DNA from: Ostrea edulis
Lineage: Eukaryota
DNA length: 64,000 nt
NCBI RefSeq assembly: GCF_947568905.1
Contig: NC_079165.1
Coordinates: 28,272,001 to 28,336,000 of the forward strand
Reading direction: 5' to 3'
Below are positions 18,333 to 27,538 of this stretch, one piece after another; position 1 is the stretch's first letter, and each line of letters opens with the position of its first letter. Position numbers and translations under genes: made by a program. The notes below the pieces were generated by a model that saw only the letters and a list, made by a program, of their open reading frames with translations, was not told the DNA's origin and searched no databases.

Positions 18333-21300
18333 TTAGTCTTGTACATCAAAACAGTAGACGTGTTTAGCTTTGTCGACCCGAAGACCGACCGTGGAATCGG
18401 CGAAAAAATGAATGCAGGGAAACAAAATGGCGATGAATTTCCCAGGAACTATGTCTTCCCACTTGAAGTATGGCGTTGGATCGTCGTTTGGGAGGTAGAA
18501 ACTGACGTAAATCTCTCGTCTCTCAGAATCCTGGGAAAAAAGTTTTGACATAGTCAAAAATAATCTTTAATTGCAGTTTTCTCGTAGACACCCAGTTGTT
18601 TAAGGTGTGTTGTTGATTGTAAATGTATTATATAATGAATGTCCTAGGTTTGTTGTTAATTGTAATTTTATTATAGAATGTAAATAACTTTTAAGGTATC
18701 CGAACCTCATTAGACCACGTGACTAAAAAGACGATGTCGGGACATATCGGTGTAAGTCGGAAGGCGTCGGAAATTAATAAAAGTATTTTAATAAATAAAT
18801 AAAAATGAAATAAATAACTATTTTTTTAAATTTCATTTTGTTCGTCAATCATTAAAAAATAAAATACGTTCAAGTTTGATGTTTCCGTAAAGTCTCGCAC
18901 ACACGAGATGGTGGGAAAATCTGTAATGGCTGCGCCCCTGAAAAAAGTCGTGCGGGACAAACGCGGTCGTTTTACGTCGGATATAGTCAAAAAAGGGGAG
19001 AAGGATGACAGCACAAAACGACAGAAGGGTATTAGAAACATCGTTGTCGAACATAATTACCCCATTGGACATTTTCACGACGATAACAACAGATGTGAAG
19101 AATGTTGTCCGGGAATATCACGGTTAGTGAATTCAAAAAAGATAGAAACGGAAGATTGGGGAAAGGGTAGGCGTGTTGTAGAATTGAGATGTTTGGTCGA
19201 TTCCTTAAGCCACTGTCTGTTCTGTAGGATGGGACCGTTATATCTTGCGCATGAAACTATCAAAGGTGAAATGAAGATGGGACTGGGGGGGGGGGGGTAT
19301 TTGTATATACAGTGTATTAACTGCGGGCAGCTGAATACCATCCCATATGGCAGTACATACTCCGAGCCATCGACAAGAGGACAGAGAATGTTTTCAGTGA
19401 ACACAAAGTTAGGTGCAGGTATGTACTGTGTGTTTATAATTGAGAAATTGTACAATGTTATTGTTTGCATATTCAATTATATGTCACACCCACAGAAGGT
19501 TTGAAATTTGCTGAATATGTTTTGTAGCAATGATTGACTCAATTGGAGGCCCACAACGAGTCAATAATTTCCTTACAACGCTTGATCTCCCATCAATATC
19601 AAACAAAAATCTCAAAGCCATGGAACGACGAGCTGGGCAAATAATTGAAGATTATGCAGAGAAAAGTATGGCCATTGCAACTAAAGTATCATTTGACACT
19701 GAAATGAGGTAAGTTTTTCAAAGTACACAAGGCTACAATAAAATATATGTGTGTTTCCTATTTTAATTCCCCCTAACTTAGGTAAGTAAAACATATGTTT
19801 TACGGCGTGACCGTGTTTGAGGGCGAAGCAAAAAAAAATTTGGCATTAGTATCTATATCCAGAACAGAACAAAAACAACCCGAAGTTAGCAGGATTTGAT
19901 CCGCCTATATATTGAACGCGGGAAATATAACGCAACTGATGTAAACAGTACATTGTGACGTCATATTCAGCGTCGTATTTTAGCAAATTTACAAACATAG
20001 CGTCTGAACCACAACAACAAACATGGCGTTAATGGTGGAGTGATTATATATGATTAAAAAAATAAGATTTACATGCTTTTAAGAAATTTTTGTAACATCT
20101 CAGAACGACGTGAACTAGGGTAGACGAGATTCAAAATGGAGAAATACATGTCCACGCGATAGTATTCGAATCGACGCCATTAGTACCAAAATTTTCAAGT
20201 TCCATAGGTATGGTTTAATTTTTCATTGTTTTCCTATATTTTCCTTTTAAACATGTATATACGTGTTACCTATAGGGAGAGCTCCGCTCTCACGGCCCTT
20301 CGGGCCGTGAGAGGGCTTCGCCCTCTATTATTTTATAAAAAGTTAAACATTTGATCAAAATCTTAGTTTTTGATATGCTGTAAATACAGACCTATCTACA
20401 TTAGAATACTTTTCAAACAATATGATTGATTGATTAGATATTGTTAACGTCCCTCTCGAGCATCCTTCAATCATATGGAGATGAAGGGCTGTAAAATTCA
20501 GGCCTATGTTTGGCGCTTACAGCCTTTGAGCAGGGATGGGTCTTTATCGTGCACAACAGCTGTGACACAGGACCTCGGTTTTTGCAGTCTCATCTGAAGG
20601 ACAGAGAAACTCGAATGCAAATGATATAAAACATTCCTGTATCATCAATAGAGTCTGCAGCAAAAATGTAGATGTAGGGTCGGGAAACCAAAAACACACA
20701 TATATTTTATTTAGGCCTAATATGTTTGAAAGATTGACATAATTGTTATTTGTAGTTTGTCAGAAATTTTTCAATTTAAAATACAGGGAATCATGTAGCC
20801 TTTGTAGGCACATACTGTGTGCGACTCGACACAAAACACTAGGTATTATGCTATTTGATACTTTCATTTTGTAATTTGATATGAGTGGATAGGTATTGAC
20901 TCATTAGAAGTGAGTGCCCTCCTATTTTATTCAGACTCTATCAATTGTGTGCTTCAGGAAAAATTATAAATGAATAAGTGAAACAATCAAAATATGCCAT
21001 GTACCTTCAGAAATTATCATTCATTGTAGTGACATTTCAACTATGGAAGAAAAAAATGTACCATTTGTCCATCATGCTACTTTTGATGAGGAGTTGGGTA
21101 CTGCAGCTATAGATGGTGAATTCCTAGGGTATGTAATATTAGAATGTTGAAACCTATGTTGGAAATGACAAAGTTGTTACACTTCATGTGCATATATAGA
21201 TAACATGTATACCTATGCGAGTATAAATATGATACAACTAAAATAATTTCAGTAATCCTGCATCACTTTTGAAATCTACAAGTGTGCTTCAAGACCAGGA

Positions 21301-23715
21301 GGAAAGTGGCGATTCTGGAAATGATGATGATGATGAGTAAGTGCAACAGTTCTAACATTTTCATTATATACTATAACACTAACAACAGCATATTTTTTTT
21401 AAATCTTGGGAGTGATCTGACTTGTATCAATGTACCAGTTAAACAGACACAGTGCTTGCACTTTTACAATTCATGCACCAGAGAAAAGCCTTGATTAATT
21501 GGAAATATACATTATCTTGTGTTATTTATTTCAGGAATTCTAACCCAGCGCAAGTTTGTCTGCCAGATCGAGATTCACAAAATGTTGACCATTCTCCTCA
21601 GACTCCAAAACTAGTTTGTCCATCACATGTAGATTTACAGGAAATGGACCTTGCTCTTCACACTCCACAAGGAATAGTCAAGTAATTCTCATATACTTTA
21701 ATGCTTTCATGTGATACATTTAATTTCGTTCATATATATTATCATATTGTGAACTTTAGTGCATTCTCATTCTATGTGGACATTATTTATAGTGAAACTG
21801 CACATATAGACAAAGTGTCAGGAAGGTCATTTGGAAAAGTCAAGATGAAAAGACAGGGAGTGGCTGTTTCAAAGAAGCTGAAATTTAACCCATGAACAAG
21901 AACAGGAATGACAGTTTGTGCTGACCATGGCTGGCAAAAAAGGGGATTTGATAGTCTAACAGGTAAGAGAATAAATTATAAAAGTGTAATGTGGAATTCT
22001 GCTGAAAACTGTATAAATTTTCATTTTACGCCATAAAACATTTAAACATTCAACAGGCCATACATTTTTGGTCAGCAAAAGTAAGTATGGCAATAAAGTT
22101 CTTAAAACTGTTATTAAACATCGAACTTGTTCGGTTTGCAAATGGTGGAAACGAAATAGACCTGGACAAAAGGTTCGCAATCACAAATGTGTCTGGAATC
22201 ACAAAGGTTCATCAAGACAGATGGAGGCTATGGCTGGGATTCAGGCGATAAAGGAGATGATGTCACAAAAGACACCAGTTGAAGTTATTGAGGGTGATGG
22301 AGACAATACTGTGATATCAAGGATTGAGAATGAACTGGGTGTAAGAATAAAGAAAAAACTTGACCGTAACCATTGTGTTAAAAATGTCACTAAACATTTA
22401 TATGACTTGAAGAATAGTAAAGCCGCAAAGATAAGCAATCAGGTGATTCAGCACTTCACAAAATGTATCAAGTACATCTTCGCTAAAAATCAAGGTGATC
22501 CAGATGGCATGCGGGAAAACTTGGAAGCATTAGTGCCTCACCAGTTCGGAGACCATACCAAGTGTGTTCCAAGGTTTTGTGGATACAAGAGAAGACCAGC
22601 TGAGACATACTTGCATCGAAGTTTACCGTACAAGACATCACTGAGTGACCCAGTTTTGAAAGAAAAACTTGATAAAATCTTTGAACCTGTGATTGCCAAA
22701 GCTACCTTGTATAGTGATTTAGGGTCCAGCCAAGCTTGCGAACATGCTAATCGAGCAGTCAGTTTACGAGCACCAAAACACTTGCATTATGGGGAAAGTC
22801 AAAGCCTTGACTTCCGTGTAAAAGCTACTGCAGCATGTATGAATGAAGGTCGCAAATACTTACCGGAGGTAGACAAGTTTGATGTTATATTGAGGTGTTT
22901 GTTGAGTTTTGTTCAATTTCCTGTTGTCAGTTTTGACCATTTTTTGCAGCTTATTTTTGAAAATTAATATATATTACTAACAAAAACTCTTCGATGAATG
23001 TGTATATTTTCAAAGTAAGAAAACCTTATTTACATTAACTTTAGGCTAATATTTATTGTTATAAATGAAAGGTGAAGATAACGAACAGTGATGAATCTCA
23101 TAATTCATAATTTTTGAATTACTCGAAAAGAATGATGAATTCTTTCTTGCTCATTCTTATTCTGACAGTGTATATACTATTACTTTTAGGTATTTAAAAA
23201 ATTGATGAAATCTTTCTTGCTCGTTCTTATTCAGTGTATTTACTATTACTTTCAGGTATTTAAAGAACACGGATTATCCCCTGGTCATCATACACTGAAA
23301 TATTCGGAGAAGATGGACATGGAAAGACAGAAGAGACAGGAAAGATCAAAGTTGCCTGGAAAGAAGCGCCGTCGATTGGAATTGAAGCAGGAGAGAATTA
23401 CCCAAAAAGGAGCCAATGAAGCAGCTGAAGGAGATACATATCAATCAGGTAAACAATAACTTACAAAGTGTTAGTTTATGAATAAATCTTGAAATTGATT
23501 GTTTGTATATTAGAGATACATGTATATTCATATTTCATCAGAAGTTGGACTTTCTGACCAAGTCGACATCCAGACTATTCCTGATGCAGTTCCCAAACCA
23601 GGATTCACCAAAGTCGACCACCTGAACGAAGTTCAAGAGAATAGGGTCATTATCGACCTAGAAACTACAGGATTGAGTAAGAAATATTATTGACTTCCAC
23701 ATTTTAGCTGACCTT

Positions 23716-23747
<32 letters not shown>

Positions 23748-26700
23748 TTATTGTCTGTCGTCTGTCTGTAAACTTTTTACTTGCGAATATATAAGGAAAA
23801 TCTATAAATATGGGCCAGGGTGACTCAGGTGAGCGATGTGGTCCATGGGCTCATTGTTGGAGTTTTGAATACCATTACCAATTCTGTATTTAGAGTAAAT
23901 TACATGTATATAGATAGTTTATATCAATATGTGTTTTCATAAGTTTTCAATTCAATTTTATGGATCTTTTTCAGTTCAGCGTGGACTAATGCCTCATATC
24001 ACACAGATTGCTGCACAAGTTATGGATTCTGATGCCGAGTTTTCATATTATGTTTCACCTAAAGTACCCATCAATGAAAATACTGAACAGATAACTGGGA
24101 TATCCTGGGATGGTGAACACATGACTGTGCACGGAAAGCAAGTGGCAACTGTATCGATAACAGAAGCACTTTCAAAATTTTTAATTTTTTTGAAGAACAT
24201 TAGCAATGTTGTTTTGATTGCACACAATGGAAGAGTTTTTGACTTCCGTGTTCTATCCTATGCTATATGTAGAGTAGGAATGATGAATGAATTTTCAAAT
24301 CATGTTTTAGCATTTGTGGATTCTTTGTCATCATTGCGTTCAAAAGTTCCAAAACTTGGTTCTTATAAGCAAGAATTTCTAGCAGAATATTTCTGTCAAG
24401 AATCTTACAATGCTCATGATGCAGTTGATGATGTTAAAATGCTAGCTAAGATTTTGTGTGCAAGTGGCATGACAAAAGCAGATTATGTAAAACATTCTTA
24501 TGCATCAAATTGTCATTTTTTACAAGAAGAGTTCAATCTTGTCAAGGCCAAAAATATTGGCACCCTACATTGTCTTGTTGCCAGTGGTGTTCTCAAATTA
24601 GCTACTGCAGAAAATATAGCAGGTTCTGGCCTAAATCTACAACATTTGAAACTTGTTTGGCAGAGAGATGGTGAAGATGGTCTGAGAAATATTTTTACTG
24701 CAAAAAATTGTATCGAGAAACCACGTGTTACCAAAGATAAAAAGTTGTTGGGAAATATTATTCCAAAGCTTTGTTCATTTTTTGAACAGTAAATTTGTCA
24801 TGTTTTATAAGCATGTTTTGTGTTTGACACATGTAAAGTTGATACATTAGCTATTTGGTCTTTAGATGTGAAAAGTAAACTTTATATGATAATGAGCATT
24901 TCCTAATGATTCAAGGTCAGGTCGATGTTAGTGACATTTATCATTGTTTTATTAAGAGTTCCTATGCTTTCATTGTTTGAATGATACATTTTTCATATGT
25001 CTGTTAATTTTTTTTTCCAAATTGGAATGTTGCATCAAAATGTTTCAATGTTAAGATTTTTGTAAGGGGGGGGGGGGGGGGATGTGGTTCAACATAGTAT
25101 AATGTAAGTTTCCTATGGTAAATGTCTTTATAATTGTGGTAAACAAAAATATAGGGATTGAACTTCATTTGCAGTACATTATTTGTGAAAAGTTTACATT
25201 ATCTTTTTTTAAAAAACAGCGATTTTGTACATTTCGCCGTTTTGCACTTGAATTTTTGTATTGGGGGTGGGGGTGTTCAACATAGCATATTTAAAGTTTT
25301 CTACGGTAAATATCTTTATAATTGTGCTAAACAAAAATATAGGGATTGAACTTCATTTGCAGCAAAATATTTGTGAAATTTCTGCATCATTTTTTTTTAA
25401 AATAGCAATTTTGTACATTTCACCTTTTTGCACTTGAATTTTTATTTTTCTATTTTTCATGTTTTCTCATAGTCAATCTGTCTTTTTGATGTTAGAAGTG
25501 TTTTAAAATAAAAATTATGCTATAATAATAAAAGAAAACTTTAAATGTCTATTTATTTCTTATTTTATTTCATTATTTGAAAAAAAAGTTGCAGCATAAT
25601 TGAAAAATGTTGGGAAATATAAATAATTGATAATATAAGGTAATTTTGCGGTAAATTTTCAATAAAAAACATAGATATATCTTTTAGCATCAATTACGGT
25701 CATAATACACACCTTGATTTACATTTTATAAAAATCCGCTAATGTGGGTCGGATACCTTAAATGCAGCAAACCGTATAGAAATCAACGATGTGATACGAA
25801 AATGAAGAAAAAATATCAACTTCTTCTAAGTCTTGAAAATTTTAACAAATTGTGACAATATATGACAATGGAGTCGTGGTAAAACACCAGTAATAACTCC
25901 CGTTATTCTTTATTTGGAATATGAATCTTATCATTTTGATTTATGTTGTTTGGAGAAAGAATTACACTTCATCATCAGACGGTATCAGTTTTAGAATTCA
26001 AAGAATTTGAAACAACCGTTTCGTTTTCGTTTGTTAAAAGTCCCATTTGAGAGTTTTCCCACTCCATGTAGAGACCTCACCAGTTGTAGATGAAGTCACT
26101 ACGTAAAAATTCAACAGTTAAAAACACATCTGTGCAAAAGAAACTTGCCTGTAAGAACACATTATGGCGGCCCCTGTAGGAATGAAACCTCCTGATGTAT
26201 GCTAAGAACACATTTGGAATAGCACAAATGTTGGAGGCAAAAGGACCTTTCTGTTCAACAGGGATTTCTTTAACTCGGGTTATCAGAGTATAACGAGCAA
26301 ACTCCCTCTTGGTTTTTTCTATCGCTTTTGCGCATGCGTTGGCAGTTCTTTCAATAATCAAATTCATATCTGCACCATCTGCAAAAAATGCTGGATTACC
26401 TTGCAAGGACAATTGGGCATGAGAAGGTGAAGACACCATTGTTCCTTTAGAGCCCTTACTTCCGATGTCTCCTCCGATCGTAAAAAAAATTTTTTGTTCC
26501 GAAATTGGGATCAGCATTTGCAAATTTGTACACATTGTACTGTGCTTTGATTTATCCAACTCTCTACAAATTTCTGAACAGTACACAACCGACCTACAGT
26601 TTGGACACAAGACATTTCCGGCTGCCGATTTACATCGATTACATGAAAACTCGGTATACTTTTTTATTTCTTCTGGTGAAAAAATTATATCATTTCGGTT

Positions 26701-27538
26701 TCTCCCTCCTTGTTCTTCGGGTTTAACAAGACCCATAATATAGCAATCCATGTCGCTCAGAGTCTCTCTGACTGTCGTCTGCAATCTACCGCCTCTACAG
26801 GACATTTTGTGCTTCTTCCAATCCGACGACTGGCAAGATTGGGAGCAATAATAAACTGCTCTACATTGCGAACACACAAGAGAATTGTTTTTACATTTAC
26901 AGTGTGCACATATGGGTGATAGTTCCTCTGCAATATCTGCTTTTGAACATTCGGATTTATGCCTTTTCCAGTCCTTTTTCTGACATTTCTCCGAGCAGTA
27001 CTTCTGTTTTCTACATCTGTTGCATGTCTTCATTTGACCTTCTACTCCACACAAAGAGCACGTTTCTCGTGTGATTTTATCAGCATCTTTCTCAAAATCT
27101 GCAGCTCGGTCATAGATAGCCTCCCTCTCCTCAAGTTCATTGTCAATACCACTATCTACATCTATGGTCTTTGAACATTCGGTTTTGTGTCTCCGAGTCC
27201 AATCACTACGTTGACATTTTCTAGAGCAGTATAATACCGCACTGCATCCTGAACATTTCTTTAGCTGATCTGATGGTTTACCACAGAAATGACACGTGTC
27301 TTTACACCTATCTGGACCTGTACAAAGATAAAAGTAGAGTGTATTTACAGGACCGGGTATGCTGTCCGAATAGGGCATGTGCAAAAGCCTAATAGCGAGT
27401 TTCTTAAAACGCGAGACTGCGCGACGGCGTGTTGTGTATTAACGTATGCGTTTTAAGAAACGCGCTATTCCGCTTTTGCACATGACCCTATCCGAACACC
27501 ATAACCGGGTCTATATTACACGTACGCACCTCCCCCCT

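What the first reader, a model, noticed from the sequence alone, without database searches (positions are those of the whole stretch)
18695..25757. Intact-ended Kolobok-like transposon encoding a spliced DDE transposase fused to a DEDDh 3'-5' exonuclease
Seen: a TTAA TSD, 19-bp GG..CC TIRs, and a 10-exon, phase-consistent ORF of 1049 codons. It comprises an N-terminal CxxC..CxxC region, an acidic/Pro linker over three small exons, a DDE core (ADHGWQKRG, EGDGD, SQACEHAN) with CxxC..H.C and H...H..C...C Zn motifs, a basic helix, and then a complete DEDDh nuclease (IIDLETTGL, AHNGRVFD, AHDAVDD) with a PML-C-like tail. Known: Kolobok uses TTAA, and some lineages carry accessory nucleases or helicases. 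Inference: a covalently linked DnaQ-family exonuclease could trim donor or target ends, or degrade DNA intermediates to evade nucleic-acid sensing. I cannot tell whether this exact architecture is already catalogued.
Basis: partly seen in the sequence, partly recalled or inferred. Interest (0 to 1): 0.8.

Follow-up and report, generated by a model that had tools for sequence, protein, structure and literature searches.

The report
KolobokD transposon with fused exonuclease
This is a real, recently mobile cut-and-paste DNA transposon of the already described KolobokD type, and its exonuclease part turns out to be the closest known relative of the fish Plex9 and PML exon-9 exonucleases.

Summary
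The observation largely holds. Window 18695-25757 is a 7,063-bp element with TTAA on both sides and 19-bp GG..CC inverted ends (17/19). The genome holds about 16 copies, seven of them (this one included) 99.0-100% alike, and every copy end inspected at a different site has its own TTAA.

A 10-exon GT-AG gene encodes a Kolobok-type DDE transposase (PF20700), a basic linker, a complete DEDDh exonuclease and a PML_C tail. Single-ORF homologues in scallops, oysters, mussels and krill have the same order, so the fusion is real.

One claim fails. In the 10-exon model this copy has an in-frame TGA at codon 375 (21893-21895). All six sibling copies read CGA there, and three are fully open. A 7-exon model that skips the "linker" exons avoids the stop and fits homologues better, but it uses a weak acceptor.

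The architecture is already published as KolobokD (Kojima & Bao 2022, PMC9587614), which proposes the same 3'-end-trimming role. This is a new member of a known kind.

One point is new. The exonuclease plus PML_C module is closest to fish Plex9 and PML exon 9, a link absent from the papers searched.

The scan noted a sibling copy elsewhere in this genome (s1-279309).

The parts
18691..18694 (.). Left TTAA target-site duplication
   Evidence: Read directly. Every other copy end examined also abuts TTAA, or a one-base variant in old copies, next to unrelated flanks.
18695..18713 (+). Left terminal inverted repeat, GGTATCCGAACCTCATTAG (5'-GG end)
   Evidence: Inverted repeat I4. The identical left end is found in seven other copies.
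18908..19418 (+). Exon 1: start codon and N-terminal Cys-rich region, with a poly-G run at about 19285-19297
   Evidence: GT donor. Aligns with residues 49 onward of the scallop homologue P0180. The poly-G run is 7 to 13 G long among copies, and lengths outside steps of three break the frame in two copies.
19528..19708 (+). Exon 2: N-terminal part of the PF20700 transposase domain
   Evidence: Pfam PF20700, 1.2e-6, profile positions 84-131. AG/GT splice sites.
19794..20325 (.). Nested 532-bp dispersed repeat inside intron 2; not part of the Kolobok family sequence
   Evidence: Absent from five of the six aligned sibling copies and shared only with the chromosome 8 copy at 53.6 Mb. Genomic contigs skip exactly 19793 to 20326. 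More than a dozen copies 98-100% alike lie elsewhere in the genome.
21030..21128 (+). Exon 3 of the 10-exon model (acidic linker); coding status unverified
   Evidence: AG/GT sites, phase kept, open in all copies. No homologue counterpart.
21253..21336 (+). Exon 4 of the 10-exon model (Asp-rich, with a variable GAT/ATG repeat); unverified
   Evidence: AG/GT sites. Length is 81-96 nt among copies. No homologue counterpart.
21535..21681 (+). Exon 5 of the 10-exon model (Pro/Gln-rich linker); unverified
   Evidence: AG/GT sites. No homologue counterpart.
21793..21962 (+). Exon 6: end of the linker, in-frame TGA at 21893-21895, then the first catalytic Asp motif ADHGWQKRG. An alternative weak acceptor lies before 21901.
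   Evidence: Translation. Siblings read CGA at this codon. Joining 19708 directly to 21901 gives a 903-aa open product that aligns with P0180 in one alignment, E 6e-128.
22057..22868 (+). Exon 7: DDE core with the CCHC finger (CSVC...HKC), EGDGD, DRNH (the C/DxxH signature), the HQFGDHTKCVPRFC finger and SQACEHAN
   Evidence: Pfam PF20700, 2.8e-30. 34% identity to scallop P0180, E 2e-41. The motifs match the Kolobok alignment in the paper's supplement.
23256..23448 (+). Exon 8: basic stretch (KKRRR), probably a nuclear localisation signal
   Evidence: AG/GT sites. Colinear with P0180. A contig of run X1 lies exactly on 23256-23448. The localisation role is inferred.
23542..23676 (+). Exon 9: spacer and the Exo I motif IIDLETTGL
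   Evidence: AG/GT sites. A contig of run X1 begins exactly at 23542 and leaves the genome sequence at 23676. Aligns with FDLETTG of P0180.
23975..24792 (+). Exon 10: remainder of the DEDDh exonuclease (HNGRVFD, HDAVDD), the helical PML_C / SAM-like tail, and the stop codon
   Evidence: Pfam RNase_T 4e-12 and PML_C 8e-20. Solved Plex9-type structures match at E 1e-20 to 2e-24. The AlphaFold model has pLDDT 95.7 and its best fold matches are Plex9.1, Exuperantia EXO+SAM and TREX1.
25075..25402 (.). 188-bp tandem duplication in the 3' non-coding part of the element
   Evidence: Direct repeats D1 and D2, 84-86% identity.
25739..25757 (-). Right terminal inverted repeat (CC-3' end)
   Evidence: Inverted repeat I4. 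Conserved in the other copies.
25758..25761 (.). Right TTAA target-site duplication
   Evidence: Read directly.

Best explanation
This is a copy of an autonomous cut-and-paste DNA transposon of the KolobokD lineage of the Kolobok superfamily. It inserted at a TTAA on the strand opposite to a neighbouring MYND-finger ORF; earlier scan notes place it inside an intron of that gene.

One spliced gene encodes, in order:
- an N-terminal Cys-rich region;
- a Kolobok DDE transposase with two zinc fingers;
- a basic, NLS-like linker;
- a catalytically complete DEDDh 3'-5' exonuclease;
- a helical SAM-like (PML_C) tail.

The family moved recently in this genome. Under the 10-exon model this copy is disabled by a CGA-to-TGA change at codon 375, and it also carries a nested repeat in intron 2.

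Inferred mechanism: the transposase binds the GG..CC ends, excises the element and integrates it at TTAA. The tethered exonuclease acts on 3' DNA ends made during excision or integration, either trimming the non-transferred strand or flaps, or destroying free excised DNA.

Shown here: the element boundaries, its mobility, the domain order and the presence of all catalytic residues. Not shown: any enzymatic activity, or what the exonuclease does.
For: Ends and mobility:
- TTAA plus the 19-bp inverted repeats are in the sequence.
- The genome holds 33 TTAA-plus-end matches against 0 in the control.
- Six sibling copies are 99.0-99.6% identical to this one, and eight distinct insertion sites each show both ends abutting TTAA beside unrelated flanks.
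- The window copy and the chromosome 8 copy at 53.6 Mb share the nested repeat but sit at different TTAA sites, so the element moved after that insertion.

Gene and domains:
- All ten exons have GT-AG sites.
- Three sibling copies have a fully open 1050-1053-codon spliced frame.
- Pfam finds PF20700, RNase_T and PML_C.
- The product is colinear with the scallop protein XP_069108910.1 from transposase to PML_C (E 1e-98; E 6e-128 for the 7-exon model).
- The same three-domain single ORF occurs in Mizuhopecten, Argopecten, Saccostrea, Mytilus and the krill Meganyctiphanes.
- In an alignment of 36 relatives, H83, N84, D89 and D152 of the exon-10 protein are invariant and H147 is nearly so; these are the HNGxxFD and HDAxxD active-site motifs.
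- The fold matches Plex9.1, Exuperantia and TREX1.

Literature and transcripts:
- Kojima & Bao 2022 define KolobokD and describe TTAA duplications, RR..YY termini, the C/DxxH motif and both zinc fingers (PMC9587614).
- Contigs of run X1, guessed to be RNA, start and stop exactly at the bounds of exons 8 and 9.
Against: - No run on record as RNA holds the element. No splice joint was displayed, and one X1 contig retains intron 8.
- Exons 3-5 and the 5' part of exon 6 lack any homologue support.
- This copy has an in-frame stop under the 10-exon model.
- No named KolobokD reference sequence could be compared directly. The name does not occur in the paper's stored supplements and Repbase was not available.
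- The role of the exonuclease is untested, here and in the literature.
Confidence: 0.9

Rival explanations
1. The real mRNA has 7 exons. Exon 2 (ending at 19708) is spliced directly to an acceptor before 21901, the 'linker' exons 3-5 and the 5' part of exon 6 are intronic, the TGA at 21893 lies in the intron, and the window copy encodes an intact 903-aa protein.
For: The 7-exon product has no internal stop. It aligns with the scallop homologue in one alignment (residues 52-903 against 49-878, E 6e-128), and the connector before the first catalytic Asp has the same length in both. Homologues have only 10-17 residues at this point.
Against: The acceptor is poor: the sequence is cccatgaacaag|A, with no pyrimidine tract and an AAG acceptor. 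Exons 3-6 all have strong AG/GT sites and short introns, keep the phase, and stay open over about 145 codons in the sibling copies. I estimate that as roughly 1 in 40,000 by chance in AT-rich DNA before allowing for the choice of exons.
Confidence: 0.3
2. The exonuclease exons 9-10 belong to a separate transcript or gene carried by the element, as with the second ORFs of some Kolobok lineages, and are not fused to the transposase.
For: No full-length transcript was seen. In run X1, coverage is concentrated on exons 8-10.
Against: Phases are continuous across exons 7-8-9-10. Single uninterrupted ORFs with transposase, exonuclease and PML_C occur in at least five named species. One alignment spans the whole junction region.
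Confidence: 0.05
3. It is a piggyBac-type or Mutator-type element rather than Kolobok. TTAA is also the piggyBac target, and Pfam names PF20700 'Mutator-like'.
For: The TTAA duplication and the Pfam family name.
Against: The termini are GG..CC, not CCC..GGG. No piggyBac transposase domain was found in the pieces scanned. Mutator elements make target duplications of about 8-10 bp, which rests on my own knowledge, whereas this one makes 4 bp. The motifs match the Kolobok alignment of PMC9587614.
Confidence: 0.02
4. It is a domesticated host gene, or a segmental duplicate of one, and not a mobile element.
For: Four old copies on chromosome 1 (5.12-5.64 Mb) are segmental duplicates that share flanks.
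Against: At least eight copies sit at unrelated sites, each with its own TTAA and precise ends. They are 99% or more identical.
Confidence: 0.02

Closest known systems
KolobokD lineage of the Kolobok superfamily (Kojima & Bao 2022, Mob DNA 13:24, PMC9587614)
   Same: TTAA duplication, RR..YY termini, a DDE transposase with the C/DxxH motif and both zinc fingers, and a DEDDh (DnaQ) exonuclease. Reported from molluscs, arthropods and cnidarians, with the exonuclease likened to Exuperantia, TREX and ERI1 and proposed to degrade DNA intermediates from the 3' end.
   Different: The paper gives KolobokD one short section. In the text searched it does not mention the PML_C / SAM-like tail, the affinity to Plex9 and PML exon 9, or intron-exon structure. 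This family has 6 to 9 introns and a possible 146-residue linker insertion. I could not compare it with a named KolobokD sequence.
Plex9 exonucleases and the PML-I exon-9 domain (CDE / PXL) of jawed vertebrates (PMC10123124, PMC13659232; PDB 9MRC, 9MRD)
   Same: Best sequence matches among solved structures (E 1e-20 to 2e-24, against 4e-3 for TREX1). Best fold match (TM 0.80, rmsd 1.7). The same EXO plus PML_C two-domain order as paddlefish 'PML-like' proteins, aligned end to end (E 7e-26). DEDDh residues are intact, as in active Plex9.
   Different: Plex9 and PML are host genes without a transposase or inverted repeats and are restricted to jawed vertebrates. Most teleost Plex9 proteins lack the PML_C tail. 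Identity is only 25-33%.
Drosophila Exuperantia EXO-like plus SAM-like domains (PDB 5L80)
   Same: Third-best fold match, covering both the exonuclease-like and the helical domain. A weak Pfam hit to Exu_RNase_H_like.
   Different: Exuperantia is a pseudo-nuclease lacking the DEDD residues and is an RNA-binding host protein (PMC13659232). Identity is 17%.
TREX1 / TREX2
   Same: DEDDh 3'-5' DNA exonuclease fold.
   Different: Much more distant in sequence (E 0.004-0.4), with no PML_C tail.
KolobokE, KolobokH and KolobokP
   Same: Kolobok transposases with an accessory DNA-processing enzyme (PMC9587614).
   Different: Their accessory enzymes are a PD-(D/E)xK nuclease, a RecQ helicase and a His-Me finger nuclease, not DEDDh.
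piggyBac
   Same: TTAA target duplication.
   Different: Different termini and an unrelated transposase family (PMC9587614).

Membership tests
Kolobok superfamily | [quoted passage not shown] | tested here: met
   TTAA flanks both ends here and in every young copy, next to different flanks.
Kolobok superfamily | Termini 5'-RR ... YY-3' | tested here: met
   5'-GG ... CC-3' in all copies.
Kolobok superfamily | DDD/E transposase with a C/DxxH motif between the second Asp and the Glu | tested here: met
   ADHGWQKRG, EGDGD, DRNH and SQACEHAN. They align with D..GWQ.RG, DxD, D.NH and QANE of scallop P0180 and of Kolobok-1_CGi and Kolobok-7_CGi in the paper's Data S5. PF20700 hit at 2.8e-30.
Kolobok superfamily | Zinc finger between the second Asp and the Glu, downstream of C/DxxH | tested here: met
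   HQFGDHTKCVPRFCGY, aligned with HPFGDHSEC.SWC of P0180 and HVFGDHSYC..WCGY of Kolobok-1_CGi.
Kolobok superfamily | Placement among Repbase Kolobok families in a DDE-core tree | not testable with these tools
   Repbase is not available, and I did not retype the supplement's alignment.
KolobokD lineage | Encodes a DEDDh (DnaQ) exonuclease | tested here: met
   RNase_T 4e-12. DLET, HNGxxFD and HDAxxD are present. Fold and sequence match Plex9, TREX and Exuperantia.
KolobokD lineage | Second (CCHC) zinc finger downstream of the first catalytic Asp | tested here: met
   CSVC-x14-HKC in exon 7, aligned with CRIC...HLC of P0180.
KolobokD lineage | Clusters with named KolobokD families | not testable with these tools
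   The name KolobokD does not occur in the paper's stored supplements. Mollusc and arthropod proteins with the same architecture are its relatives.
piggyBac | piggyBac DDD transposase and CCC..GGG termini | tested here: not met
   No piggyBac domain in the Pfam scan. The termini are GG..CC.
Mutator / MULE | Long target duplication (about 8-10 bp, from my own knowledge) and a MULE transposase | tested here: not met
   The duplication is the 4-bp TTAA. PF20700 is only named 'Mutator-like'.
Plex9 / PML-CDE exonuclease family (as homologue, not as host gene) | DEDDh EXO domain followed by a PML_C domain | tested here: met
   PML_C 8e-20 together with RNase_T. End-to-end alignment with paddlefish PML-like protein. 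Vertebrate sequences form one clade among the transposon-linked ones.
Plex9 / PML-CDE exonuclease family (as host gene) | Single host locus without a transposase or inverted repeats | tested here: not met
   Here the module is part of a multi-copy transposon.

The most novel reading that the evidence does not exclude
The EXO plus SAM-like (PML_C) module encoded by PML exon 9, and by the Plex9 genes of jawed vertebrates, was acquired from a KolobokD-type DNA transposon. On this reading an anti-retroelement exonuclease of vertebrates began as a transposon's accessory nuclease. My evidence shows one family with the same two-domain order, a single vertebrate clade set among many transposon-linked clades, and a far wider host range for the transposon form. 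The root, and therefore the direction of transfer, is unresolved. No paper in the library holds both 'Kolobok' and 'promyelocytic'.
Probability: 0.35. Interest if true: 0.75.

Novelty: new member of a known kind. Interest (0 to 1): 0.35.

Why it matters
As a transposon it is ordinary for a specialist, because KolobokD was named in 2022. Its value is as a well-resolved, very young family with complete ends, target duplications, a gene structure and naturally open copies. That makes it a usable model for testing what a transposase-tethered 3'-5' exonuclease does, which nobody has assayed.

The more interesting by-product concerns the accessory module. It is not a generic DnaQ domain but the same EXO plus PML_C unit as fish Plex9 and PML exon 9. 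The origin of that unit in jawed vertebrates was not traced beyond vertebrates in the passages of the PML papers I searched.

Tried and rejected
- **RNA evidence.** No holder of the sequence is on record as RNA. Runs X3, X4 and X8 proved to be genomic DNA, since their contigs cover introns. Run X1 gave only contigs that end at exon bounds, with no displayed joint.
- **Exon versus intron conservation, and synonymous versus non-synonymous counts.** I compared this copy with the old copies L031 and L032 to test whether the linker exons are coding. Even the core exons show a neutral pattern (about 1 synonymous to 2.2 non-synonymous changes, evenly spread over codon positions), so the test has no power.
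- **Named KolobokD sequences.** I searched the paper's supplements for the name and for this protein's motifs. The name is absent, no identical motif strings were found, and only other Kolobok families turned up for comparison.
- **Direction of transfer between Kolobok and PML.** In the tree the vertebrates form one clade, so without an outgroup any direction fits. The root shown is only a midpoint.
- **Classifications rejected.** piggyBac and MULE (see the membership test).
- **Not sent.** No binding test was run with complex prediction, because no binding claim is made.

Full report
**What is in the sequence**

The region 18695-25757 is bounded by TTAA at 18691-18694 and 25758-25761. It has 19-bp terminal inverted repeats that differ at two positions, GGTATCCGAaCCtCATTAG on the left and the complement of GGTATCCGAcCCaCATTAG on the right.

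A 10-exon model has canonical AG acceptors and GT donors at every junction and consistent phases. It sums to 3150 nt, or 1049 codons plus the stop. The exons are 18908-19418, 19528-19708, 21030-21128, 21253-21336, 21535-21681, 21793-21962, 22057-22868, 23256-23448, 23542-23676 and 23975-24792.

Pfam finds PF20700 ('Mutator-like transposase') in exon 2 (1.2e-6) and exon 7 (2.8e-30). In exon 10 it finds RNase_T (4e-12) and PML_C, PF25244 (8e-20).

One claim fails. The spliced frame of this copy has an in-frame TGA at codon 375 (window 21893-21895), 10 codons before the first catalytic Asp.

**It is a real, recently mobile family**

The window's own genome is 895 Mb in 52 contigs, and the window lies at C2:28.27 Mb. 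It holds six more full or nearly full copies that are 99.0-99.6% identical, plus older and fragmentary ones at 88-97%.

Every young copy sits at a different site. Each is flanked by TTAA|GG...CC|TTAA next to unrelated flanking sequence.

The pattern of TTAA plus the terminal repeat occurs 33 times in the genome and 0 times in the reversed control. That corresponds to about 16 elements, with no large population of short derivatives sharing these ends.

The left and right ends keep their two asymmetric positions in all copies.

The window copy and the copy at C8:53.6 Mb share a 532-bp nested repeat in intron 2 (window 19794-20325). The other copies lack it, and genomic contigs of three public runs skip exactly this stretch. 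Because the two carriers lie at different TTAA sites, the element moved after it acquired that insertion.

**State of the copies**

All six sibling copies read CGA at codon 375, and only the window copy reads TGA. Genomic contigs of runs X3 and X4 also read C at 21893.

Three siblings (L003, L005, L007) have an uninterrupted spliced frame of 1050-1053 codons. Two others (L002, L004) are out of frame in exon 1, where a poly-G run varies from 7 to 13 G; L004 also lacks one base in exon 10. One copy (L008) has a large internal deletion.

**How good is the gene model**

The spliced product aligns in a single alignment with an 878-aa protein of the scallop Argopecten irradians (XP_069108910.1, P0180). 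Model residues 380-1049 match its residues 229-878 at E 1e-98, spanning the transposase core, the basic linker, the exonuclease and the PML_C tail. The N-terminus (52-217) matches residues 49-212.

This supports the fusion and the phases of junctions 6/7, 7/8, 8/9 and 9/10.

By contrast, residues 218-379 have no counterpart in any homologue. Homologues have only 10-17 residues there.

An alternative 7-exon model joins 19708 directly to an acceptor before 21901.
- In its favour: it puts the TGA in an intron, yields an open 903-aa product, and aligns with the scallop protein in one alignment at E 6e-128.
- Against it: that acceptor is weak, lacking a pyrimidine tract and ending in AAG. The four extra exons have strong splice sites and stay open over about 145 codons.

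I rate the 10-exon form more likely (about 0.65 to 0.3), but only RNA can decide. Comparing old copies gave no help, because even the core exons diverge neutrally.

**Transcript evidence is thin**

No run on record as RNA holds the element. Runs X3, X4 and X8 are genomic, since their contigs cross exon-intron borders.

Run X1 is guessed to be RNA and comes from another organism label. It carries contigs about 95-97% alike that lie exactly on exon 8 (23256-23448, with 23 further letters upstream that do not fit the intron) and exactly on exon 9 (23542-23676, followed by 71 letters that do not fit the intron). Another contig retains intron 8.

That is what a mixture of spliced and unspliced RNA would give in a de Bruijn assembly. 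However, the joints themselves were not displayed, so I count this only as suggestive.

**What it is**

The features are those given for Kolobok by Kojima & Bao 2022 (PMC9587614):
- TTAA target duplications, with 5'-RR and YY-3' termini rather than the piggyBac ends;
- a DDD/E transposase sharing the C/DxxH motif (here DRNH);
- a zinc finger between the second Asp and the Glu (HQFGDHTKCVPRFC);
- in some lineages, a second CCHC finger after the first Asp (CSVC...HKC).

The motifs line up with Kolobok-1_CGi and Kolobok-7_CGi in that paper's alignment.

It is the only paper in the library that uses the name.

**Distribution of the fusion**

An exhaustive profile search with the exon-10 protein found 1896 relatives at E 1e-3 or better. 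Of 12 long relatives scanned, 11 carry PF20700 plus an exonuclease-type hit (RNase_T, or Exu_RNase_H_like in P0068) plus PML_C in one ORF.

The named ones come from Mizuhopecten yessoensis, Argopecten irradians, Saccostrea echinata, Mytilus galloprovincialis and the krill Meganyctiphanes norvegica. A 1229-aa Mytilus coruscus protein has the exonuclease and PML_C without a detected transposase.

**The exonuclease module**

All DEDDh motifs are present: DLET in exon 9, and HNGxxFD and HDAxxD in exon 10. H83, N84, D89 and D152 of the exon-10 protein are invariant across 36 relatives, and H147 is nearly so.

The AlphaFold model of exon 10 is confident (pLDDT 95.7). Its best matches among solved structures are:
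- zebrafish Plex9.1 (9MRC, 9MRD; TM 0.80, rmsd 1.7);
- then Exuperantia EXO-like plus SAM-like domains (5L80), matching over both domains;
- then TREX1 and TREX2.

By sequence, the Plex9-type structures score E 1e-20 to 2e-24, against 4e-3 for TREX1.

A teleost protein of the Plex9 family (Cottoperca gobio XP_029289261.1) ranks 25th among 1.8 billion representatives. The paddlefish 'PML-like' protein aligns end to end over both the exonuclease and PML_C domains (E 7e-26).

In a maximum-likelihood tree of 120 modules, the 21 vertebrate sequences form one strongly supported clade. It sits among many invertebrate clades, 16 of whose members are demonstrably fused to a transposase. The tree has no outgroup, so it cannot say whether vertebrates took the module from a transposon or the reverse.

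The PML papers place the origin of this domain in jawed vertebrates and do not mention transposons. No paper in the library holds both 'Kolobok' and 'promyelocytic'. I offer this link as the most novel reading, not as a finding.

**Mechanism**

Shown here: precise ends, TTAA duplication, recent mobility, one gene with the stated domain order, and complete catalytic motifs in both enzymes.

Inferred:
- The basic KKRRR stretch in exon 8 is a nuclear localisation signal.
- The tethered exonuclease works on 3' ends produced by the transposase.

I think trimming of the non-transferred strand or of flaps at the element ends or the donor site is somewhat more likely than clearance of free excised DNA to avoid sensing. 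My reason is that the enzyme is covalently tied to the transposase in every lineage seen, but nothing here tests either idea.

**Context**

The element lies on the + strand. Directly downstream, on the minus strand, is an ORF (26080-27384) with four MYND fingers. Earlier notes of this scan (s1-301991, s1-302218) place the transposon inside an intron of that gene, which I did not test further.

Another note (s1-279309) reports a complete Kolobok transposase-exonuclease element on another piece of this genome. That agrees with the sibling copies found here.

**Verdict**

The finding is real and well observed, apart from the missed stop codon. The classification is right and the architecture is already described. 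It is a new member of a known kind, of modest interest as a clean young model family, with an untested but attractive evolutionary lead toward Plex9 and PML.

Noticed in passing
window 19794-20325: A 532-bp dispersed repeat is nested in intron 2 of this copy and of the chromosome 8 copy at 53.6 Mb only. More than a dozen copies 98-100% identical lie elsewhere in the genome, and three bases (TAT) are ambiguous at the junction. It looks like a very young non-autonomous element. I did not classify it.
   Followed up: partly
window 22880-23279 and 23680-23879 (introns 7 and 9): Word depth in genomic runs is hundreds of times that of the neighbouring exons, so these introns, present in all copies of the family, contain very high-copy repeats. 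Homologues in scallops have no interruption at these positions. It is therefore worth asking whether these introns arose from repeat insertions.
   Followed up: no
window 19285-19297 (exon 1): A poly-G run encoding Gly residues is 7, 10, 11 or 13 G long among near-identical copies. Lengths 7 and 13 keep the frame, while the shorter runs leave exon 1 out of frame in L002 and L004. This is either a slippage hot spot that switches copies off, or homopolymer error in the assembly.
   Followed up: partly
G000 C1:5120942-5129148, 5221260-5229466, 5497698-5505904 and 5628318-5636524 (loci L014-L017, L023-L031): Four old copies (83-94% identical to the window copy) share identical flanks and identical defects and lie 100-280 kb apart. 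An old insertion has been carried along by a four-fold segmental duplication.
   Followed up: partly
window 26080-27384, minus strand: An ORF with four MYND zinc fingers (PF01753, 4.7e-37) lies directly downstream. Earlier scan notes say the transposon sits in an intron of this gene, on the opposite strand.
   Followed up: partly
window 25075-25402: A 188-bp tandem duplication (84-86% identity) lies in the 3' non-coding part of the element.
   Followed up: no
P0025 (Cottoperca gobio XP_029289261.1): This teleost Plex9-family protein carries two tandem exonuclease domains and no PML_C tail. Paddlefish and sturgeon relatives keep a single exonuclease domain plus PML_C.
   Followed up: no
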